Part shown: positions 4,282 through 35,064 of the stretch, in pieces | Position numbering within the stretch: the stretch's first letter is position 1 | How the letters are laid out: every line of letters begins with the position of its first letter | Assembly: GCA_033442325.1 (NCBI GenBank) | Contig: JAWQFM010000026.1 | Coordinates: 675,138 to 739,137 of the forward strand | DNA from: Salpingoeca rosetta | Lineage: Eukaryota > Protista > Choanoflagellata | Reading direction: 5' to 3' | Length of the DNA: 64,000 bases | The notes under the pieces: generated by a model | What the model saw: the letters and a program-made list of their open reading frames with translations, nothing else | Database searches by the model: none | Told to the model about the DNA's origin: nothing | Position numbers and translations under genes: made by a program

Positions 4282-5454
4282 ATGGCACCACAATTCCGTG
4301 TGCGCATAGCGTGGCTGATAGCCTTCATTATCCTCAGTGATGGGCTGCAATGTCTCGCGTCCTGCGCCGATCCACAAGGTACGCTGTGCCGGTATGCACC
4401 GTTCCAGCTTGTAAATGCGCGCTTGTGCGTGCGTGCGTGCGTGTCTTTGGAGTGTTCGTGCGTCTGTTAGTCGGTTCGTTCGCTGTTCGTTGCTTCATGT
4501 ACTTGTTTGTTTGCTTGTCAGCGGCCCGAATGTGCAGCTGCGGGCTCTGTGATGCTGCACCTTGTAATCAAAGATGGCTTGGGCACCCTCGACAGCACAG
4601 CCAATCCTACTCACACGTGTGCATTACGTTCTGGCATGTTTTCCTTCAAGTGGAAGCGGTGCACAACAGTGACGGCATGTTCGTCCTCATGGATCCGTGC
4701 ATCGCCTACGCGCAGCCTTTGGACAGAACCGACTTTCGCGCAGCCTTGTACGTTGAAGCACCCGCAGTGGGGAGGGTGCGTGTGTGTGTGCGTAGGAGGG
4801 GAGTTGAGTCGTGGGGTAGAGGATGAGGAAGGGAAATGCCCATGCTTTCAGGGTTTTGTGACATGAACTCGCCAGGAAACGTTCCGTGCACACACACACA
4901 CACACACAGACACACACACAGACACACAGACACCACACACAGACACCACACACAAACTATTCGCTGGTGTTGATTCACCTTGCTCCGGCCTGCGCTGCTT
5001 CTGTTCCTGCTTACAGAGCACAGATAACCACGACGCCAACAGTAGCGCTGTACAAGCAGGATGTCAACGCCACCTTCTCCAGTGTGACTGCTCTCTATGA
5101 AAGCCCACAGCCCATCAACGAAACCATTCCAGGTGTGACGCACGCTGTGACTCAACATTGCAGCTCAGCACATACATATACATGCATACAGTCGACGTAC
5201 CGAATGTCGACACACACACACACACACTCACACTCGCACACTCGCGCTCACACTCGCACTCACATGCAATCACACACTCACACACACACACACACTCACT
5301 CACGCTTGTGCTGCGTGGTGGTTGTGCAGTGTGCACGCGTGCACACGTAAGCGGGTGTCTTGTGCGCGGGGTTGCATACGAGCTCATGCTCAGCAACTTG
5401 ACCGTCGTCGCAGCTTACACCGTCCCGGACGTCGCCTTCCCGCTCAACCTCTCC

Positions 5455-5530
<76 letters not shown>

Positions 5531-6951
5531 TGGGTGTGGGTGTGTGTGTTTGGATCAAACATACATTCGAGCGTACGCGTGTATGCGTATGTGCGCAGTG
5601 CTTTCCCCACACCTCATTTGTGTTGGCGGTGTTTTGTTTCTCGTGCCAGTGGTTGAGACTGCGGCAACGCACGCCACTTTCCACCTTCCCGTCAAACAGC
5701 TTCCGTCCCAATTCACAAAAGCACAGGTGTGTACGCCGTGTTTGCGTGCGCGCGCGCGTGCGTGTGTACGTGTGTGTACGTGTGTGTGTTCGTGCGTTTG
5801 CATGTGTTCCGCTTGTCTTGAAGATGCTCTGTGCGAATTGTGCGCCCGCGAGTGCTTCATGCCTGCGCGTTACCACTTGTGTACACCAGTGTCCTGCACA
5901 TGTCATCTCCCTCTCTCCCTCCCTCTCCTTGCACTGCTCAGCTGCTCATGACGTTTACCACCACCACCGTCACCACCACACATCACTGCCACCACCACCA
6001 CCACTACCGCCACCACCACCACCACCACTACCACCGTCACCACCACCACCGCCTCAACTGCGTGTGCTGCTGTACCAGATCCGCGTGTGTTCTGCCCAGC
6101 ACGGCTCTGTCGAGTCCGCCCCCGACTGCGAAGGCGACGTGGTAGGGCCGCGCATGTGTACGTGTGTGTGTGTACTTTCGTGTGTGGGTTGAAGATGGAG
6201 AAACATACACATACTCAAATACACACATACACACAGAGAGATGCACATGTATTCATTCACCTTGGTTGTGCTGCCATCATTTCAGGCAAGCGTGATGAAC
6301 AGTGGGGTTGGGTGCATTGACGTTGAGCACAACGTGACCACGTCGACCACCGTCACCATCGCCGGGCTCAGGCCGTGGACAACCTTCTGTGCGTATCGCA
6401 CTTGCTCTCATGCTGGGTTGGCAGAGGGGGAGGGTTGTTAGAGTGGGGAGAGGAGGAATGTTTGGTGATTGTTCACAAATTCTACGCGTCCTGTTGCATG
6501 TCGTTCGTGTCTGTGTTTGCTTGTGGGTATGTAAATGTGGATGTGTGTCACTGTGGTACCCAACCTTTCCACCCACTCCCCCTTAGTTTTCTCTCACTTC
6601 CACCACCCTTGGCTTTCTTGCGTTGTTGGGATTTATGGCAGGTGCGTCGGTGCTGTATGTGAGCGCCAACTACGACGTGCACCACTGCATGACGTTCACG
6701 ACAAAGCAGGCTGCGTTCACATTTCCGCCCAAGGAGGTTATCCGCCTGCAACGCGACACGCACCTCATCCTCCGCCTCAAGGCCCATCCGCAGGTGGGCT
6801 GCTGTCACGATGAGACGCTGTGTGTGTGTGTGTGTGTGTGTCATGTGAGTGGGGGGAGTGGGTGAGGTTGTAAGGGCAGCTGAGACACACGAGTGACGAC
6901 AATGAAAACAACCCCAGCAGCAACGCTGTCACAAACTCCTCCACATCCTCA

Positions 6952-7044
<93 letters not shown>

Positions 7045-9098
7045 CACACACACACACACACATATGCACACCCACACACACCACAGGACGTGCCGTGGCC
7101 GAGCTTGGTACAGACCTTCCGCGTGTCTGTTGTGTCGGAGTATGGCGATCAAATCCTTGACAACGAGCGCTTCAACGTGTACGAGAAGCTTGGCTCTGAC
7201 ACAACCGGTGTGGAGCAGTTTGCCATCGAGCCCACCAGCGCGGAGATTGTATTCACTGTGCGCACTGCGTCGCTGATGCCGTACACGTGCTACTCCATCA
7301 CGGTTGCGTTTGACTCTGGCGAGTACGGCACCAGCCCCCCTGCGCGCATCACGTGCCTGCGCACGCTGCCCGGGGCGCCGCTGCAACCGGACCCGCCCGT
7401 CATTGACATGCTGGACAGCAATGGCATGTTACACGTGTCGTGGACGCTGCCGTCTCGCACGCAGGCGCCCATTGACGCGTTTGAGCTGGTGGCGAACGTG
7501 GACGAGGAAGCAGAGGTGCTTGGCGCCATTGTGTCGCGCTCCAAGCCCGCAGACACCGCCGTGCTGGTGGCGGTATCGCGCGTGGACGTGCTGCACAGCA
7601 ACGCCACGTTCAACCTGCGGCTGCGCATTGTCAATTCGCAGGGCGTCAGTCCGCTCTCTGCACTCGCCCTCGACCCGAACCAAACGCACGCCATCCTCGC
7701 AGGTGCAGTGGTGGCCGTGGTAGCCGTGGTGGCCGTGGTGGCCGTGGTGCGAGGTGGGGGAATGTGGCGAGAGAACGGGTCGTGTCATGGGGCGTCCTTG
7801 CGATTGTTCCGTTGTCTGCACCGTTCTTGTTCATCCCGCACTGACAACACACACACACACACATAAACACTCGTGCACTTCACGTCATGCCCTTTATTCA
7901 GCCCCAACCTCGGCGCCCTCCAGTGCATCGTACACACCGGGCGCTGTCCTCGGCCCCGCTGCCGTTGTCCTTGTGTGCGCACTGCTGGGCATTGCGCTGC
8001 TTACGTTTACGCAGCGGCGGCGCGAGCGAGAGAACGTGCTTGAGCTGCCAGTCCCAGACGAGTGGGAGCGTCCGCGACAGGATGTCATGATTGGCGGCAC
8101 GATTGGCTACGACGGCTTTGGCGAGGAGTTTGACGGCACTCTCAAGCAGAAGGACGGGCCGAGCGTGGGGTTGGTTGATGCCCGTGTGCGTGTGTGCGCG
8201 TGTGCGCGTGTGTACGTATGTTTGCCGGTGGGTGGGTGGGTGTGGATGCGTGGTGATAATGCTTGTGTGCTTGTGTGGCGCGCCATGTGTCTGTTTTCAC
8301 GTCTCACCTCACTTCATTCGCCACCACTGCTACCACCACTGCCGCCACCAGCATCACGGTGCGCAAGTGCAGCCTGCACAAGCGCCTGCGGGAGAAGCGG
8401 GAGTTTCTGCTTGAGGCGGAGCTGCTCAAGTCGCTGGCGCGCGACCGGCACCCGAACATCATCAACCTCGTCGGCTGCTGTCTGCAGGACGAGCCTCTCC
8501 TCATCCTCGCAGAGCAGGCCTCCCTAGGGTAGGGACCAGGGGTTGCAAGGAAAGGGGAGGGGGATTGAGGGGTGTTGGTGTTATAATGGTGTTTGTGCTG
8601 TCTTGCGAGGTGGTGAGGCTGTATCATGGCTGTCTGCGACGTTGACAATGCTGGTGTCCTGACTCACTGACCGATCGAAAACGCACAGTGCTCGTTCAAA
8701 CCAATACCCCTCACCACCACCATCATTATCACCACCATCACCATCATCATCACCACCACCACCTTCGCCACATATTATCGCCGCCCGCAGGGATCTCCGC
8801 AAGTACCTGCATCAGTTTTCGCCGCTGCTGACCGAGAACACGCTGCCCTTGACGGACCGCCTGCGCATGATGCACAACATTGCCGACGGCATGGCCTACC
8901 TCCACTCGCACGGGATCATGCACAGGGACCTCGCTGCACGGTGCGCAACTCTCCACCGCCACATGCTCGCTCCTGCATCGTGACAGTCATTTGGGGGTCG
9001 ATGGATTGAAGGAAGAAACATGTTGACATGTTGACATGTTGACACGCTGACACGTGTTTGTGTCTTCTGTGTGTGTGTGTCTTCTGTGTGTGTGTGTC

Positions 9099-28125: not shown

Positions 28126-28382
28126 TGCAGTCTTGATGTTGATAATGATGATGGTGGTGATGGGTTTGGCAGTGTGTGTGTGTGTGTGTGAGTGTGTGTG
28201 TGTGTGCATTGTCTTCAACCACTTGGCTTGTTGTGTGTGTGTGTGTGTTGTGGTGATTGTACATAAACACAGAAAGCTCAGCCGCCCACTTCGTTGATCG
28301 TACACACACACGCACGCACGCACCATCCGCCGTTGCTGTGTGCTGTCGAATTTGTATTTCACTCAGAAGCCAAAAAAGGTAA

Positions 28383-28482
28383 NNNNNNNNNNNNNNNNNN
28401 NNNNNNNNNNNNNNNNNNNNNNNNNNNNNNNNNNNNNNNNNNNNNNNNNNNNNNNNNNNNNNNNNNNNNNNNNNNNNNNNNN
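28383..28482. other. Assembly gap (100 N)
   Basis: Ns in sequence. Confidence 1.
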
Positions 28483-28815: not shown

Positions 28816-29228
28816 TTAAAGGTACTGCGAGAGCCAGCGGAAGGCGTCGCCATAGCCCTGCTTCTTGATGACAGTGCACATGAACAGCTCGAGCGGGCGA
28901 CTGGCCAGGCTGGACTTGGGCACCGTGCCCTTGCCCGTCGTCTGGCCAATGAGACCAAGCGCAGCCCGCAACTCCTCCTCGCCGGCGGCGCCGGGGATGT
29001 CAATCTTGTTGCCGAGCACAACAATTGGGATGTTCGAGATGGCCTCGTCCCCCAGCAGCGCCTGCACAAATATATTTGGGAAGGGGGTGTGAGTGAGTGA
29101 GTGAGTGAGTGAGTGAGTGAGTGAGTGAGTGAGTGAGTGAGTGAGTGAGTGAGTGAGTGAGTGAGTGAGTGAGTGAGTGAGTGAGTGAGTGAGTGAGTGA
29201 GTGAGTGAGTGAGTGTGTGTGTGAGTGA

Positions 29229-29263
<35 letters not shown>

Positions 29264-30176
29264 TGAGTGAGCGAGAGTGTGTGTGTGTTCTTGCGCAGAG
29301 CAAACGCGTTTTCCGTGTGTGCATTGTGACATGCGGCAGCGTACGCACGTCGAGTTCTGCCTTTGATTCCTTGAAGCGGTCGCGGTCCGACGCATCCACC
29401 ATAAACACAATCGCATTCACAGCAGGAAAGTACGTCTTCCACACGCGGCGCGCTGGTTGTATGTAATATGGCGTGTTGTGTATTGTGTGTGTGTGTTGGA
29501 AGGTGAGCTTGTGTGATGGCGCAGAAGAGCACTTGAACTTGAAGGATGGAGGTGAGGCCTTGAGTGCAAGCACGCACGCACGGACGGACGCACGCACGCA
29601 CACACGGGCGGCGTACAACAACAGCAGGAGCATTTGGTGTGAAGGCAGTGCTGTTGGGTGTGCCCACCTTGCTTGTGACCACCAAGATCGTGTGTTGTGA
29701 ATGTGATGCCTGCAATGGAGAGCTCCTCCGCAGCTGTGCGCAACAAGCAATGGTCACGCAAACACAACAAAAGTGGTGATGGTGGGGTGCATGAGAAGGG
29801 GGATACCTGGAAGACAGAGCGGTGATGCACGTACATGGGATTCGTACACACACACACACACACACACACAAGAATAGACGCGCACATGCACACATGCACA
29901 ACCACGCACATGCACACATGCACACATGCACAGCTGCGCACACACAAGCGCAGTCACGTACGCTCACGCACGCAAACACACAAACACACACGCACACACG
30001 CAGATGCACTTACTTGGATAGAGGGTGGGCGGTGCTGCTTGCACGCGACCGTCCCTGAGCATGTTGAGGAGGGTGGTTTTGCCTGCGGCGTCAAGGCCAA
30101 GGAACACGAGCTTGCCGCTCTTGTTGGCCAGGCCAAGCGAGGACAGCAGCCCCCAGAACCAGTCCACCAAAAACAT
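28816..30176 (-). CDS. SAR1: Small GTPase Sar1 (COPII); coding exons 30176-30014, 29733-29668, 29452-29349, 29061-28816
   Basis: [65 protein letters not shown] and [27 protein letters not shown]. Confidence 0.96.
29089..29215. repeat. (GTGA)n/(TCAC)n tetranucleotide microsatellite in the last SAR1 intron
   Basis: Seen directly. Confidence 0.9.
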
Positions 30177-31477
30177 GACGCTGTCGTGGTAGTTGTCCAA
30201 GCCAGCAGCGAGCGCGGGCGCAGCAGAGTCCGCAGATGAGCCAAACATGCGAATCAAGTCCATCACGAAACGTCAGGTGAGCGTGTGGAGGAGGGACGTG
30301 AAATGAGAGAGGAAGACGTGGGAGATGAAGACGTGGGATATGCGACACAGTGTTGATGTGGAGGGAGGGTTTTGAGAGAATCATCGAAGAAGCAAACATG
30401 GATGCAGATACACACTCAAGGTATACACACACACACAACACACACACACACAGATGCACGTACCGCTGTTTCCGCTGTGTCTGAAATATGGGGAGGGAAA
30501 GCTGTGCGTGTGTGCGTGTGTGTGTGGCACAGAGGAGAAGCGAGTCGTGAGTTGGCACACACAGCGAGAACAAACTCGACAACCACGCTGATAGATAGAA
30601 GAAGAAGAAGCGAAGGGAAAGAAGGCGGTGTCACGACAACGCGAAATGTCCACGCGTGCACAACGACAAAGAGAGAGAGAGAGGGAAGCGACACAACCCG
30701 TGCTTCTGTGTCTCCGCGCAATGATGGGGGGTGGCAAACAATGCAACAAAGCACGCACACACGAAGCAACAGCAGAGGAAAGCGAAGGAAACCCAGACAC
30801 ACACATACACGACACACATGTGGTGTTCCCGCTGTCCGTGTTCGATGCACACTCAGGCACAGAGCAACGTCACAGCAAGCAAGCAAGCAAGCAAGACAAA
30901 CACTCACATCACACACAATGACAAGGCACGCACCCCAAAGTCGTCGTCAGCCAACGAATGAGGACGTGGACTCGAAACACGAAAAGCGAAGGAAATGAAG
31001 GGAGGTCGAGCAACCAAATGGGATATAAATAGGACATACCATGGGCACGCACAGCATACAAATAGTACATCATAAAAGACTTGAATCAGTCTCACATCTC
31101 ACACGCGCCAAATCAGCACCAGTGCAGATATCAAAAGGAGCAGCACAGCGACACCGCGACGCGAACTTCGAAGGCGCAAAGACACTCAGGACACTGCCTC
31201 TGCGCTCGCACTCCTGCACAAGCACTCACCACGACCACCAAGCAAGCAAGCGCAAGCAAGCGCAAGAGAAGCGACGGCACCCGACACGACAGGCACGGTG
31301 GCCAGTTAGTGAAGTCAAGTACTTTCTTACTTTCAAATCAGCAGTTCCATTCGCCTATTCGCCTTCATAGACCAGCTCCTCAGCTCACCGAAGGCTCGAA
31401 GCCGACCACCACAGCACCAGACCACCCCACTCTACTCCAGCCTACTACGAGTACTACGACCATAACAGCCAGCCAAC

Positions 31478-32010
31478 ATGAACCCTGAGTACGACTACTT
31501 GTTCAAACTCTTGCTTGTTGGCAAGAGCGGGGCTGGGAAGTCGTGCTTACTGCTTCGCTTCGCAGAGGATACGTTTACTCAGTGCCACTTCACATCGTCC
31601 GGAGGTGGGGTCGACTTTAAGAACCACACAGTGGAATTGGATGGCAAAGTCATCAAGCTCCAGATATGGGACATGGATGGTGATGAATCCCGGTTTCGGA
31701 CTATCACATCATCGTACTATCGAAGCGCGCACGGGATCATTGTCTGCTATGACGTCACCGACAAGGATTCTTTCGACAATGTCAACTACTGGCTCCAAGA
31801 AATTGACCGCTACGCTCACGAGAACGTCAACAGGCTTCTCCTCGGCAACAAAATCGATCTGGAAGCAAAGAAGCAAGTGGACCATGCCACTGCCAAGGAG
31901 TTCGCAGACAATGTTGGCATGCCTTTTCTTGAGGTTAGTGCAAAAAACAACATTAACGTGGAGGAGGCCTTCATGACGGTCGCTGCAGACATCAAGGCCC
32001 GCATGGGACC
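31478..32010 (+). other. Rab1/Ypt1-like domain of the fusion protein
   Basis: Rab1-diagnostic N-terminus [13 protein letters not shown], plus [36 protein letters not shown] and IKARMGP. Confidence 0.93.
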
Positions 32011-34228
32011 GACGATTATGAAGAAGAAGGACCCACTCGTCCTCGAGTTCAAAGCCAAACCGTCCGTCAAGGCCCGACGACGCGTGCGCCGGGGCGTCGC
32101 TGATACCATGTGCGACTGGATTGAGAAGAAGCAAGGCAACTTTCCACACATGTGGCAGCGCCGCTGGCTCGTCCTGAGCGACACACAACTCACATACACC
32201 AAGACGGAATGGCAAGGCGAGAAGCCACGCGGCACCATCCCCCTCACCGACATCTTTGAGGTGGAGGTCCCCGACCTCACCAAGCCCCTCTTCAACCTGC
32301 ACACGCCCAGCCGCACCTACTTCATGAGCGCAAGCTCGATGGATGCCCGCGACAAATGGTTCTCCAAGATTAACCATGCCATGAAAGCGGTTTCGTTTGA
32401 GGAAGTCTCGCTTACGCACGAGTTCCTGGACAAGCCGCGTGGACAACACGGCCGCGTGCAGGTGGCAAAGGTGTCGTGTGAGCATATCACCGCATCCGTG
32501 GCCGCCTTCAAGTGTCTGCACTTGCGCAACATTGTCCTTGACGTGGGCATGGTGGATGCCTTCACTGCGGAAATCAACCTTCTGCGCCAGGTCAGGATCA
32601 ACCACGAAAACGTTGTGGCGTTCCTGGGCCACGGCCAGATGCCCATCACCGCGCTTGAGGAGCACGAGAGCACAGACACCATTCGTGACCTGAAGCAGGA
32701 GCTGCCGCTTGTGCCTTTCTACCTGATGGAGGCGATGGACATGTCGCTGCACAGCTTCCTGTTTGACCCCTGCTGCCCGCTCACCGCCGCGCAGGCCCTG
32801 CACTGCATGCGAGCAGCCATCAGCGCCGTGCACTACCTGCACTCCCGCACGCCCTCCATCATCCACGCCGACATCAACACGCCAAACTTTCTCGTCAACG
32901 CAAACTTTCACGTCAAGCTGGCAGACTTTGGCTGCGCGCGCGCCGAGGAGAGGGCAGACACCAAGTTCACGGACGTCGTGTCCACCCCTGGCTACGCCGC
33001 CCCGGAGGTGTTCAGCACGGAAGGGTGGACGAAGGCCATTGACGTGTTCAGCCTGGGCGTGGTGCTGTTTGAGCTGTTGCACCAGCGAAAGGCGTACCAC
33101 TACGATGGGTCTGGCTGTACGACGCTGGAAGAGTACAAGCGGCGCGTGAGCGCGTTTGAGCTGCCGCAGGTGGAGGAGCCAACCACGGACCTGGCCAGGC
33201 GGGACGCAGCAAACGAGGACCTGCTGCAGACCGCAATCCACTCATGTCTTGGCAAGGCCGGCACCCGCCCGTCGCCAGTCCACCTGCTTGACCCCTTGAA
33301 GAAGTCCCGTGAGCTGTATGACGCGCGCCCGGTTGCCACGCCCGCGTGGCTGGGCGCCAAGATCACACAGGTGCAGTCCCATACGGAAGACACGCCTGTG
33401 CCGTCGCTGAGCACGGTGGACCGGGCATGGCTGCCCAAGCCGCGAGGAAGCAGCGAGGAGGGGGAGGAGGAAGGAGATAAAAGTGGCAACAGCGATCACC
33501 TTGCAGATGGTGGCAGTGACGGCAACGCGCGCACGCAGGCCGCTCACGAGGAAGCACAGGCAGAGGGAAGCAGCAGCGGCGGCAGCAGTGGAGAGGAAGG
33601 GAAGCAAGACAAACAAGAGAAGGAGAAGGAGAAGGATGAGAATGGGGAGGAGTGGCCCGAGTACGAGTATGACGTGTTTATCAGTTATCGCAAAGAGTGC
33701 GACCGTGTGGCTGCCGAGGGCGTTGCAGACCAGCTGCAGCACGCGCAGCTCCGGGTGTTCCTGGATGCAGACTCCATCTTGCCGTCACACGACTGGCAGC
33801 AGACGTTCCAAGATGCCCTGCGCCGCTCGCGCCTCTTCCTCCCGCTCATGTCCCACCGCTCGCTCTGTGAGACGGGCCCGTGCAATGGCTTGCACAACGT
33901 GACGCCGACCTCGCCCGTCGACAACGTGCTGCTGGAGTATGAGATGGCCGTGATGCTTGCAAGCAAAGGGCGCATGTCCATCTTTCCTGTTGGCCTGGCA
34001 GAGGGTGTTGATGTGCCTGGCCGCGGACGGGCCATCTTGCCGTTTGGCGATTTTGACTTCCCCTCGCGCTGCCCGGAAACAGGGACACCCACGGCGCCGG
34101 ACGGCAGTGTCAGGGCGACGATGGAGGCGGTGTTTTCGCGCCAATTCCACCGCTTGGACCCAGAGGACCGCGCAGCCAAGCACGTGCTCGCCCGCGATGT
34201 CGCCGCAGCCGTCAGGCGCCTGCAATAG
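31478..34228 (+). CDS. Intronless 916-aa fusion protein: Rab1-like GTPase, PH domain, TKL-type kinase, acidic linker, TIR domain
   Basis: Single uninterrupted [34 protein letters not shown] (Rab1); [21 protein letters not shown] (PH); [39 protein letters not shown] (kinase); [21 protein letters not shown] (TIR). Confidence 0.92.
32105..32390 (+). other. PH domain of the fusion protein
   Basis: Basic beta1-beta2 segment KKQG..WQRRW, PRGTIPL, RTYFMSA and a C-terminal helix Trp (DKWFSKI). Confidence 0.85.
32390..33310 (+). other. Protein kinase domain (TKL-like, non-RD) of the fusion protein
   Basis: AAFK, alpha[32 protein letters not shown] and RPS. Confidence 0.88.
33661..34225 (+). other. 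TIR domain (TIR_2/SARM1/bacterial-like) of the fusion protein
   Basis: Box1 [15 protein letters not shown]...[24 protein letters not shown] and IFPV. Confidence 0.88.
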
Positions 34229-34858
34229 TGTCTTTTGGGGCGCCTTGTTTGTGTGTGTGTGTGTGTGTGTGTGGATGTGTGATTGGTTGTGTTCGTGTTT
34301 GTTTATTTGGTTGATTGCTTGCTTGCTTGCATCATGGTTGTTTGCAAACATTACTTTGTGACATGACCACTTTTACATTTTCTTTTCTTCTTTACCTTTG
34401 TGTACAACGTAGTATTCGACTTAGTGATACACCATAAGACCATGGGCCATGCAGGTTTTATCGTCAGCGCTGAATGACACTTTGAAGCGTCACAAGTACC
34501 ATGGGGCTGCGAGCCCATAATTGCCATGTGCACAACAGTCATGTTCACCTATTCTCTGCTATTGCTTCGTCATAAGCAAGTACAACCTCTGCTTCCTCAC
34601 AGCAGCAATGTAGGATCACTGGCTGGCTTGAATTCGTTTATGGTACATACACCATGCTTCGGAACAAACAGACAAGCAGCACAGCATGTGAACCACCCAA
34701 CATAGTTTCTTTTCTCAGTACAAATTGGGAAGGGCACAAAGTGCGAGCTCACAGACAAACAGACAATTCAACTTCTCGACCATTTCCACCCTCTCTCGTC
34801 CCTCCCCGCACATTGGTGCAGTCGTGTGTTGCGCTGCTGCTGATGTCACCACCATCTA

Positions 34859-35064
34859 TCAACGCCTGCGCTCTTGCTTCTGTGTCTTTTTCCTCCTCTC
34901 CTCCTTTGCCTTTTCTTTTCGCTGCTTATCTGCCGCCAAAGCAGCCTTGTTGCGCGCAGTCTGGGATGGATGGATGGGTGTACGCACGGGTGTGCGTGTA
35001 TGAGGTTGTGAGTTCAAAAAAGGATTGGAAGGGGCACATCAGGTGCCAACAACTCCTGTGTGCA

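What the first reader, a model, noticed from the sequence alone, without database searches (positions are those of the whole stretch)
31478..34228. Single-chain Rab1-PH-kinase-TIR protein: candidate undescribed immune or cell-death signalling system
Seen: one uninterrupted 916-aa ORF carries four recognisable signalling domains in the order Rab1 GTPase, PH, TKL-like kinase, acidic linker, TIR. Known: TIR domains and IRAK/Pelle-type kinases work together as separate proteins in Toll signalling. Kinase-TIR fusions are reported from choanoflagellates. GTPase-kinase fusions are known as Roco (Roc-COR) proteins, but here the GTPase is a Rab1 copy and no COR domain is visible. Inference: a sensor (Rab), membrane anchor (PH), transducer (kinase) and effector (TIR) in one polypeptide, plausibly acting on phagosomes or ER-Golgi membranes of a bacterivorous cell. 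I know of no characterised protein with this architecture.
Basis: partly seen in the sequence, partly recalled or inferred. Interest (0 to 1): 0.92.

Follow-up and report, generated by a model that had tools for sequence, protein, structure and literature searches.

The report
Choanoflagellate Rab1-PH-kinase-TIR signalling protein
This is a real, expressed, intron-free gene of the choanoflagellate Salpingoeca rosetta that joins a crippled Rab1 copy, a PH domain, an apparently active kinase and an enzyme-type TIR domain; it belongs to the uncharacterised 'Kinase TIR' class, and no paper I found describes its Rab1-PH front end.

Summary
Window 31478-34228 (+) is one 916-aa ORF with Ras/Rab1 (residues 10-173), PH (211-302), protein kinase (322-577) and TIR_2 (733-841) domains. 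It has no transmembrane segment, LRR or COR domain.

Independent contigs reproduce the DNA. Stranded RNA-seq covers the whole ORF on the sense strand, thinly, with no splice joints.

The architecture recurs outside this genome:
- a Salpingoeca urceolata transcript;
- an intron-containing genomic contig from another sequencing run;
- environmental sequences.

A TIR-less sister subfamily (Rab-like, PH, pseudokinase) occurs in this genome, Barroeca and Hartaetosiga.

By domain criteria the protein is a 'Kinase TIR' (Richter et al. 2018), a class that was named but never characterised. So the kinase-TIR core is not new. New here:
- The G domain is an old Rab1 copy under purifying selection. It has lost the prenylation cysteines, and every relative examined with that region (five proteins) has a damaged DxxGQ motif, damaged differently between lineages.
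- TIR-bearing members keep the kinase catalytic residues.
- The TIR keeps the catalytic Glu (E820) and folds like NAD-cleaving TIRs. A related S. rosetta TIR reportedly makes cADPR.

Function is inferred only. The scan separately noted a Rab-Roc-COR-TIR fusion elsewhere in this genome. Interest is moderate to high.

The parts
31135..31477 (+). approximate 5' UTR; transcription starts somewhere in 31135-31300, about 150-300 bp from the start of the divergent Sar1 gene (about 30980, minus strand)
   Evidence: Sense-strand RNA-seq reads begin in bin 31135-31301. Minus-strand molecules end at 30978/30981.
31478..34228 (+). coding sequence, 916 codons plus stop, no intron
   Evidence: ORF. No joints in RNA-seq. 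An independent contig is identical.
31478..32011 (+). Rab1-derived G domain (residues 1-178). G1 GKSGAGKS, G4 NKID and G5 SAK are intact. Switch I carries a 2-residue Gly-rich insertion. Switch II reads DMDGDES: the catalytic Gln position is Asp69, with a 1-residue insertion. The switch-II Thr75 segment [11 protein letters not shown] is kept.
   Evidence: Pfam Ras 1e-52. Residue-by-residue alignment to human Rab1A/B. 74% identical to this genome's own intron-containing Rab1, with synonymous sites saturated. Residue positions.
32012..32098 (+). basic linker (residues 179-207). It still resembles the Rab1 hypervariable tail ([20 protein letters not shown] against Rab1 MGPTMASGGAKKKDTLDIKAKPA) but runs on where Rab1 ends in GGCCS, so there is no prenylation motif.
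   Evidence: tblastn and ORF comparison with the Rab1 locus L023.
32099..32392 (+). PH domain (residues 208-305). Its beta1-beta2 region keeps K..WQRRW (R228, R229), a partial match to the phosphoinositide-binding signature.
   Evidence: Pfam PH 1e-12 and PH_3 1e-7. pLDDT 70-87 in the full-length model. Motif comparison across orthologs.
32393..33337 (+). protein kinase domain (residues 306-620). It is non-RD (HAD) and keeps K345, E365, D465, N470, D483 (DFG) and E510 (APE). The Gly-rich loop is degenerate (RGQHGRV).
   Evidence: Pfam Pkinase 1.5e-29. PDB nearest are TKL kinases. Motif alignment A1.
33338..33664 (+). acidic, low-complexity, predicted disordered linker (residues 621-729)
   Evidence: pLDDT below 50 for residues 613-726. 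Composition.
33665..34225 (+). TIR domain with a C-terminal helical extension (residues 730-916)
   Evidence: Pfam TIR_2 9e-13. AlphaFold2 model pLDDT 93.6. Foldseek top hits are RUN1, SNC1, RPP1, L6, AbTir and SARM1.
33935..33937 (+). codon of Glu820, the predicted catalytic glutamate, in the motif DNVLLEYE at the start of helix alphaC
   Evidence: Invariant in the 13-sequence TIR alignment A2. Same motif position as Glu1118 of S. rosetta F2UB80, whose TIR is listed as cADPR-producing; the preprint says activity depended on the catalytic Glu in all cases.
34229..34474 (+). approximate 3' UTR
   Evidence: Sense-strand reads continue to bin 34308-34474. A convergent minus-strand transcript starts being covered at 34475-34641 and more strongly from 34642.

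Best explanation
This is a genuine single gene of Salpingoeca rosetta. It is this species' member of a choanoflagellate family with the order Rab1-derived G domain, PH, kinase, TIR, and it falls within the uncharacterised 'Kinase TIR' class.

Proposed mechanism:
1. It is a cytosolic, self-contained signalling enzyme.
2. The N-terminal Rab1 copy no longer works as a cycling, prenylated Rab. It has no CC motif, the catalytic Gln is replaced and the switches are remodelled. It probably still binds nucleotide, because G1, G4 and G5 are intact.
3. Together with the PH domain it serves as a regulatory and targeting module, comparable in logic to the Roc domain of ROCO/LRRK2 kinases.
4. The non-RD, TKL-like kinase is catalytically competent and transduces or gates the signal. 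One possibility is phosphorylation in cis of the retained switch-II threonine of its own Rab module.
5. The C-terminal TIR is of the NAD+-cleaving type, with catalytic Glu820. On clustering it produces a cADPR-type nucleotide signal or consumes NAD+.

Shown here: the ORF, domains, motif states, transcription, conservation and selection on the Rab module. Inferred: every biochemical activity, the order of events and an immune role.
For: Gene and architecture are real. The same order of domains occurs in:
- the S. urceolata transcript P0061 (892 aa; Ras 10-167, kinase 345-627, TIR_2 703-832; Pfam did not report its PH domain, but the PH-kinase region of the query aligns to residues 239-664);
- environmental P0065;
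- genomic contig L044, where the Rab C-terminus and the start of the PH domain lie in one exon.

Rab module:
- Best PDB hits are Rab1/Ypt1 for this protein, P0061 and P0077.
- It is 74% identical to the genome's own Rab1, with pS 0.80 (saturated) and dN 0.18, so it is an old copy under purifying selection.
- DTAGQ is damaged in the five relatives aligned or read in that region, differently between lineages: DMDGD here, DRAGE in S. urceolata, DTADQ in L044, DSSGS in Barroeca, DATGS in the C2 paralog.
- There is no C-terminal Cys motif.

Kinase: K345, E365, D465, N470, DFG and APE are kept wherever the aligned sequence of a TIR-bearing member (this protein, P0061, P0065, P0062) covers them. They are lost in the TIR-less relatives P0063, P0077, P0154 and the C2 paralog.

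TIR:
- The model has pLDDT 93.6.
- Its nearest solved structures are enzymatic TIRs.
- E820 is invariant.
- Preprint 10.64898/2026.04.20.719644 reports that the F2UB80 TIR of S. rosetta, which has the same DNVLLE motif, makes cADPR, and that activity depended on the catalytic Glu in all cases. That exact sequence is encoded in this genome.

TKL kinases TAK1 and LRRK2 phosphorylate the switch-II Thr72 of Rab1 or Rab8 (PMC7219890). The T-I-T segment is retained in most family members.
Against: - There is no biochemical or genetic evidence for this protein.
- A conserved Glu does not guarantee activity. The same preprint notes that TLR2, IL-1R9 and IL-1R10 keep the Glu but are inactive.
- Foldseek TM-scores are modest (0.5-0.64).
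- The kinase Gly-rich loop is degenerate, and its TKL assignment rests on a margin of about 7 bits.
- The basic PH motif is not conserved in S. urceolata (QTN), so lipid binding is uncertain.
- Switch I lacks a clearly aligned Thr, so the nucleotide-bound state may be unusual.
- RNA coverage is thin (about 1-7x). One run has no reads over 31636-32470, so a shorter kinase-TIR isoform from an internal start cannot be excluded.
Confidence: 0.5

Rival explanations
1. It is an adaptor-kinase of a streamlined Toll-like pathway. The TIR acts mainly as a scaffold that docks onto the TIR domains of membrane receptors, and the fused kinase replaces the MyD88 plus IRAK pair. This is the hypothesis Richter et al. 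offered for Kinase TIRs. It is not exclusive of an enzymatic TIR.
For: - The closest TIR paralogs in this genome are membrane proteins: LRR-EGF-TM-TIR on C17 (TLR-like), Cys-rich-TM-TIR on C20, multi-TM-TIR on C36 and TM-TIR at C36:331648.
- The kinase is non-RD and nearest to IRAK/Pelle-related TKL kinases.
- Choanoflagellates lack MyD88 and IRAK (PMC6040629).
Against: - The catalytic Glu is invariant, and the nearest structures are enzymatic TIRs rather than TLR or MyD88 TIRs.
- There is no evidence of an interaction.
- The model does not explain why a Rab1 copy and a PH domain are attached and conserved.
Confidence: 0.25
2. It is an integrated-decoy sensor. The Rab1 copy is bait for bacterial effectors that bind or modify Rab1, and modification of the bait releases the kinase and the TIR. 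The logic would be that of plant NLRs with integrated decoys.
For: - The Rab module stays strongly Rab1-like under purifying selection (74% identity to the host Rab1 with saturated synonymous sites).
- It keeps the switch-II segment [11 protein letters not shown]. From my own knowledge, this segment holds the residues that Legionella effectors modify. TAK1 phosphorylation of the switch-II Thr, linked to immunity against Legionella, is stated in PMC7219890.
- It has lost what a working Rab needs: the Gln and the prenylation site.
- The organism eats bacteria.
Against: - Switch I and the first half of switch II, which most Rab1 binders contact, are altered by insertions.
- The S. urceolata copy has drifted much further from Rab1 (170 against 279 bits), and P0065 further still.
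- I know of no pathogen of choanoflagellates that targets Rab1.
Confidence: 0.1
3. It is an artefact or a decaying gene: an assembly or annotation chimera of a Rab1 pseudogene with a downstream kinase-TIR gene, or a non-functional relic.
For: Low expression. One RNA run lacks reads over the Rab C-terminus and PH part. The G domain carries lesions in its catalytic motifs.
Against: - An independent contig is identical across the ORF.
- The 2.75-kb frame is open.
- The same architecture occurs in a transcript of another species and in a genomic contig where Rab and PH share an exon.
- dN is far below the saturated dS.
- Catalytic residues of the kinase and TIR are conserved.
Confidence: 0.03

Closest known systems
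Choanoflagellate 'Kinase TIRs' (Richter et al. 2018, eLife, PMC6040629)
   Same: Kinase domain followed by TIR in one cytosolic protein without LRR or transmembrane segment; choanoflagellate-specific; no function assigned.
   Different: The class was defined only by domain content. The N-terminal Rab1-derived G domain plus PH, its degenerate GTPase motifs and the TIR-less pseudokinase sister subfamily are not mentioned in the passages I read or searched.
ROCO proteins / LRRK2 (Roc-COR-kinase)
   Same: A Ras-superfamily G domain and a TKL-group kinase in one chain. LRRK2 acts on Rab switch-II threonines.
   Different: The G domain here is Rab1-derived, not Roc. There is no COR dimerisation domain. 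A PH domain lies between the G domain and the kinase. A TIR output is present.
MyD88 + IRAK/Pelle in animal Toll signalling
   Same: A TIR module coupled to a non-RD TKL-type kinase.
   Different: They are covalently fused here, there are no death domains, and the TIR keeps the catalytic Glu and resembles enzymatic TIRs.
NAD+-cleaving TIRs: SARM1, plant TNL TIRs (RUN1, RPP1, L6), bacterial AbTir/ThsB, and S. rosetta F2UB80
   Same: TIR fold with Glu at the start of alphaC. These are the nearest solved structures. F2UB80 shares the DNVLLE motif and is reported to make cADPR.
   Different: Sequence identity to solved TIRs is only 13-20%. The domain has a roughly 60-residue C-terminal extension. 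Activity is untested. The upstream domains (Rab1, PH, kinase) are not found in any of these.
Rab1/Ypt1
   Same: 70-74% identity over the G domain; RabF-type motifs; G1, G4 and G5 intact; a remnant of the hypervariable tail.
   Different: No prenylation cysteines, catalytic Gln replaced by Asp, insertions in both switches, and fusion to downstream domains.

Membership tests
Kinase TIR class (Richter et al. 2018) | Pkinase or Pkinase_Tyr domain followed by a TIR domain in the same protein | tested here: met
   Pfam Pkinase 333-577 and TIR_2 733-841. Criteria read in supplementary file 6 of the paper.
Kinase TIR class (Richter et al. 2018) | No LRR and no transmembrane segment (additional domains allowed) | tested here: met
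   No LRR family at E<=1. Maximum 19-residue Kyte-Doolittle mean is 1.35, inside a kinase helix. Phobius, the paper's own transmembrane predictor, was not run.
Kinase TIR class (Richter et al. 2018) | Choanoflagellate origin | tested here: met
   The genome encodes a stretch of about 180 aa that reads identical, by eye, to the published S. rosetta F2UB80 TIR. Orthologs are named Salpingoeca urceolata and S. macrocollata.
Rab1/Ypt1 GTPase | Best similarity to Rab1 with G1 (GxxxxGKS), G4 (NKxD) and G5 (SAK) motifs | tested here: met
   Rab1A/B 1e-82 against Rab8 1e-55. [12 protein letters not shown] and SAK are present.
Rab1/Ypt1 GTPase | DxxGQ with catalytic Gln, and canonical switch I Thr | tested here: not met
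   Switch II reads DMDGDES (Asp69 at the Gln position, plus a 1-residue insertion). Switch I reads [11 protein letters not shown], with a 2-residue insertion.
Rab1/Ypt1 GTPase | C-terminal Cys prenylation motif | tested here: not met
   The genome's own Rab1 ends in GGCCS. The fusion continues into the PH domain after KAKPS.
ROCO (Roc-COR-kinase) | COR domain following the G domain | tested here: not met
   No COR family in Pfam at E<=1. A PH domain occupies that position.
ROCO (Roc-COR-kinase) | G domain of Roc type | tested here: not met
   The Pfam Roc hit (88 bits) is far weaker than Ras (178 bits), and the nearest proteins are Rab1.
Catalytically competent eukaryotic protein kinase | VAIK Lys, alphaC Glu, HxD Asp, catalytic-loop Asn, DFG, APE | tested here: met
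   K345, E365, D465, N470, D483 and E510. It is non-RD (HAD), and the Gly-rich loop has 2 of 3 glycines.
Catalytically competent eukaryotic protein kinase | Phosphotransfer activity | not testable with these tools
   Needs an in vitro kinase assay.
NAD+-cleaving (enzymatic) TIR domains | TIR fold | tested here: met
   AlphaFold2 model pLDDT 93.6. There are 63 PDB matches at E<=0.001, and the 50 listed are all TIR domains.
NAD+-cleaving (enzymatic) TIR domains | Glutamate at the catalytic position at the start of alphaC | tested here: met
   E820 is invariant in A2 and lies in helix 816-829 of the model. It has the same motif position as Glu1118 of F2UB80. No residue-level structural superposition was available.
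NAD+-cleaving (enzymatic) TIR domains | NAD+ cleavage or cADPR-isomer production | not testable with these tools
   Needs expression of residues 722-916, wild type and E820Q, with LC-MS.

The most novel reading that the evidence does not exclude
The fused Rab1 copy is an integrated decoy. It would be a non-cycling mimic of the host's Rab1 that reports tampering by bacterial effectors, or is gated by cis-phosphorylation of its switch-II threonine, and so switches on a kinase and a cADPR-producing TIR. That would be NLR-style 'integrated decoy' immunity, coupled to TIR nucleotide signalling, in the sister group of animals.
Probability: 0.1. Interest if true: 0.9.

Novelty: new variant of a known kind. 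Interest (0 to 1): 0.6.

Why it matters
[quoted passage not shown] They have TLR-like receptors and NF-kB but lack MyD88 and IRAK, so how their TIR proteins signal is an open question. Kinase TIRs were proposed in 2018 as the missing link and have not been studied since, as far as I could find.

This gene gives a concrete, conserved and complete example in the genetically tractable species S. rosetta. It carries three separately testable activities: nucleotide binding, phosphotransfer and NAD+ cleavage. Its TIR-less pseudo-enzyme paralog offers a natural contrast.

Recent work reports that a related S. rosetta TIR produces cADPR. Together with that, the gene makes it testable whether enzymatic TIR signalling coupled to a kinase predates animal Toll signalling. 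The repeated inactivation of the GTPase switch, in different ways, in a Rab1 copy that is otherwise under purifying selection is also an unusual case of a small GTPase being repurposed as a regulatory or bait module.

Tried and rejected
1. Recent retrocopy or gene conversion from Rab1. The idea came from the intron-free state against at least 6 exons in the true Rab1, the tail similarity and a 31-of-32-nt match at the start codon. It is rejected as a recent event: synonymous sites are saturated (pS 0.80). Ancient retroposition is neither supported nor excluded, and the L044 ortholog has introns in its Rab part.

2. The RNA-seq spike at 31469-31635 is not expression of this gene. Its loose ends read ...LIGDSGVGK, and the downstream one matches the true Rab1 exon exactly (L023 3430-3456). 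The upstream loose-end sequence was not found within the 5-kb Rab1 locus fetched, presumably because the 5' exon lies further away.

3. Complex prediction of this TIR with the TLR-like TIR of C17 returned no answer (score 0.00, controls not run). This is not evidence either way.

4. The search for homologous proteins:
- With the whole protein, hits were mostly Rab1-containing fusion proteins and unrelated kinases; no full-length relative was found.
- With alignment A1, results were swamped by Rab1 and Rab1 mis-fusions.
- The word-based search of residues 560-916 found only three distant kinase-TIR proteins.
- The exhaustive HMMER search was what found the family.

5. The ESM Atlas look-up gave only generic kinase and Rab clusters, all below 0.9.

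6. The bacterial promoter and terminator scan is irrelevant for a eukaryote.

7. Full-length AlphaFold2 with 7 sequences gave mean pLDDT 62. It is useful only for domain boundaries and linker disorder, not for interdomain contacts.

8. Whether this protein is listed in the TIR tables of the 2026 preprint could not be determined. The stored tables are truncated, and accession numbers for this protein are masked.
Full report
OBSERVATION. The window holds one uninterrupted ORF at 31478..34228 (+), 916 aa. Genome search gives an open frame of 920 aa, so only about four sense codons separate the upstream stop from the ATG, and no N-terminal extension is possible without splicing.

Pfam finds four domains:
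- Ras, residues 10-173, E 1e-52
- PH, 211-302, E 1e-12
- Pkinase, 333-577, E 1.5e-29
- TIR_2, 733-841, E 9e-13

There is no COR or LRR hit. The weaker Roc hit overlaps the Ras hit and reflects generic G-domain similarity. By sequence the G domain is Rab1: Rab1A/B score 1e-82, against 1e-55 for Rab8. The kinase is nearest to TKL-group kinases (PBL2, CTR1, Pto, TAK1, BRI1, BIK1, RIPK), but only by a few bits over PLK and MAPK, so 'TKL-like' is tentative. There is no transmembrane segment. Residues 613-726 are acidic and predicted disordered.

IS IT REAL? A contig assembled from a different public run matches 30535-34239 with no difference. Thirteen runs hold at least half of the sampled words, and 18 runs from five studies hold the stretch or part of it.

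Three stranded RNA-seq runs give sense-strand reads from about 31135 to about 34474. The deepest run has reads in all bins at about 1-7x. There are no joints and no indels.

The sharp peak at 31469-31635 is not this gene. Its reads carry loose ends that read on as canonical Rab1 (LIGDSGVGK), and the downstream one matches the true Rab1 exon exactly. The two genes share 31 of 32 nucleotides at the start codon.

Coverage is too thin to exclude an additional shorter isoform. One run has no reads over 31636-32470.

WHICH ORGANISM? Names are masked. A profile search of the window's own genome found a locus (C13:1706159-1706644) whose translation reads identical, by eye over about 180 aa, to the TIR of Salpingoeca rosetta protein F2UB80. 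That sequence is printed in Table S4 of preprint 10.64898/2026.04.20.719644. Paralogous copies in the same genome differ from it. The genome is 55.4 Mb. I conclude it is S. rosetta or a near-identical strain.

RELATIVES. An exhaustive HMMER search with the PH-kinase-TIR part against 1.84 billion representative proteins found a small family well above the background of generic kinases.

Members with a TIR:
- P0061, a complete transcript of Salpingoeca urceolata (892 aa: Ras 10-167, kinase, TIR_2 703-832). Pfam did not report its PH domain, but the PH-kinase part of the query aligns to its residues 239-664.
- P0065, environmental (Ras, kinase, TIR).
- P0062, S. macrocollata (PH, partial kinase, TIR).
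- P0114 and P0119, two pieces of one intron-containing gene on a contig from another sequencing run. Reading that contig (L044) shows Rab1-like exons, and one exon runs from the Rab C-terminus straight into the linker and the start of the PH domain.

Members without a TIR:
- P0077 (Barroeca monosierra) and P0154 (Hartaetosiga balthica): Ras, PH, kinase-like.
- Environmental P0063.
- A paralog in this genome on contig C2, with introns, 53% identical to P0077.

So the architecture is conserved in craspedid choanoflagellates, and a TIR-less sister subfamily exists.

STATE OF EACH DOMAIN (alignments A1 and A2).

G domain:
- G1 (GKSGAGKS), G4 (NKID) and G5 (SAK) are intact.
- Switch I carries a Gly-rich two-residue insertion.
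- Switch II reads DMDGDES, so Asp69 replaces the catalytic Gln.
- The genome's own Rab1 (contig C5, at least six exons) ends ...KKKDTLDIKAKPASSSGGCCS. The fusion keeps a recognisable tail ([15 protein letters not shown]) but no cysteines.
- The five relatives aligned or read in this region each have a damaged DTAGQ, in different ways: DRAGE in S. urceolata, DTADQ in L044, DSSGS in Barroeca, DATGS in the C2 paralog.
- The G domains of P0061 and P0077 also have Rab1/Ypt1 as their best PDB match.
- Against its own Rab1 the module is 74% identical in protein, while synonymous sites are saturated (pS 0.80, dN 0.18). It is therefore an old copy kept Rab1-like by selection, not a recent retrocopy.

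Kinase:
- K345, E365, D465, N470, DFG and APE are present here and, wherever the aligned sequence covers them, in the other TIR-bearing members.
- The HxD box is non-RD in every member aligned.
- The TIR-less members have lost the Lys and the DFG, and P0063 also the catalytic Asp. P0077 and P0154 have additionally lost NKxD and SAK.
- Active-looking kinase domains therefore travel with the TIR in the proteins compared here; the G domains of P0065 and P0062 are degenerate or missing, so the link is weaker for them.

TIR:
- Ten positions are invariant across 13 sequences, including E820 in DNVLLEYE.
- An AlphaFold2 model of residues 722-916 is confident (pLDDT 93.6).
- Its best Foldseek matches are the NAD+-cleaving TIRs of plant NLRs (RUN1, SNC1, RPP1, L6, RPS4), AbTir and SARM1, rather than TLR or MyD88 TIRs. 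TM-scores are modest at 0.5-0.64.
- E820 lies near the start of helix alphaC, where catalytic glutamates lie.
- The preprint lists the F2UB80 TIR as cADPR-producing and places its catalytic Glu1118 at the same position in the motif CDNVLLEW. It also states that activity depended on that Glu in all cases.
- The same preprint warns that some TIRs keep the Glu yet are inactive.

MECHANISM. The reading I favour (about 0.5) is a self-contained cytosolic signalling enzyme:
- A non-cycling, nucleotide-binding Rab1 relic plus the PH domain regulate or localise the protein.
- A competent non-RD kinase transduces or gates the signal.
- An enzymatic TIR gives a nucleotide output.

One specific, testable idea concerns the switch-II threonine. 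TAK1 and LRRK2, both TKL kinases, phosphorylate Thr72 of Rab1 or Rab8 (PMC7219890). This family keeps that T-I-T segment (Thr75 here) in most members, so the kinase may act on its own Rab module.

Rivals:
- A TLR adaptor-kinase that replaces MyD88 plus IRAK (0.25; compatible with the favoured reading). It is supported by the fact that the nearest TIR paralogs are membrane proteins, including an LRR-EGF-TM-TIR.
- An integrated Rab1 decoy (0.1).
- An artefact or relic (0.03).

COMPARISON WITH WHAT IS KNOWN. Richter et al. 2018 (PMC6040629) named 'Kinase TIRs' as choanoflagellate-specific and uncharacterised. Their criteria are Pkinase then TIR, other domains allowed, no LRR and no transmembrane segment. 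This protein meets all of them, so the kinase-TIR core is known as a class.

The protein is not a Roco protein: it has no COR domain and its G domain is Rab1-type. It is not a functional Rab1 either: two defining features were tested and not met.

Literature searches found no paper describing a Rab-PH-kinase-TIR protein. An earlier first-stage note of this scan (s1-432384) reports a Rab-ANK-Roc-COR-TIR fusion elsewhere in the same genome. I did not check it, but it suggests that pairing a GTPase with a TIR is a recurring theme here.

VERDICT.
- Novelty: a new variant of a known but uncharacterised kind.
- Interest: 0.6. A specialist would not be astonished by a kinase-TIR in S. rosetta. The conserved, deliberately disabled Rab1 module, the coupling of active-looking kinase domains to the TIR, and the link to the recently reported cADPR-producing TIRs make it a well-defined experimental target in a tractable organism.

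Noticed in passing
G000 many contigs, e.g. L029 (C13:1706159-1706644), L030-L043: About 35 dispersed copies of an F2UB80-type TIR exon (motif CDNVLLEW); the nine translated are very similar to one another. Each is preceded by an intron directly after the beta-A strand. Several lie within 20-80 kb of the low-coordinate end of their contig (C30:19106, C26:20802, C4:38061, C36:42509, C35:41342, C12:5809). This looks like a large, possibly subtelomeric, TIR gene family in this genome.
   Followed up: partly
L022 about 4413-7389 (-) = G000:C2 about 2001400-2004400: Intron-containing paralog with a Rab-like domain, PH and a pseudokinase, and no TIR. DFG is replaced by LLP (IRLLPSAR). It is the ortholog of Barroeca monosierra P0077 (53% identity). 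It could be a regulatory partner of the TIR-bearing protein.
   Followed up: partly
window 28816-30266 (-), with transcript start near 30980: A Sar1 (COPII GTPase) gene in at least four exons lies head-to-head with the Rab1-PH-kinase-TIR gene. The two transcript starts are only about 150-300 bp apart, which suggests a bidirectional promoter. Its introns are full of (CA)n and a 12-nt repeat that translates as LTHS.
   Followed up: partly
window 31478-31509: 31 of 32 nucleotides are identical to the first coding bases of the true Rab1 mRNA (the only difference is T/C at 31486), although synonymous sites are saturated over the rest of the domain. This causes an RNA-seq cross-mapping spike. It may be a short conversion tract or a constraint near the start codon.
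   Followed up: partly
L005 3113-6712 (+) = G000:C17; L006 4267-7476 (-) = C20; L007 5082-6953 (-) = C36; L028 = C36:331648-332061: Four membrane TIR proteins whose TIR domains are the closest paralogs of the one studied: signal peptide-LRR-EGF-TM-TIR (TLR-like, 1199 aa), Cys-rich repeats-TM-TIR, multi-TM-TIR and TM-TIR.
   Followed up: partly
window 34642-34975 (-): A convergent minus-strand transcript has reads from 34475, with depth rising sharply at 34642-34975 just downstream of the gene's 3' end. A loose end at 34960 suggests a splice site. Two adjacent C>G differences at 34892-34893 appear in a minority of reads.
   Followed up: no
window about 28380-28480: A run of N (an assembly gap) lies inside the region upstream of Sar1.
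   Followed up: no
P0010 (EukProt g72948.t1), P0017, P0043, P0059, P0060: The same TIR subtype (YDVFISYR ... DNVLLEY/H) is fused to other modules in other unnamed eukaryotes: an EF-hand plus two Ras-like domains, or a different kinase with or without ankyrin repeats. Aphanomyces and Guillardia TIRs in the preprint's table show the same or a similar motif.
   Followed up: no
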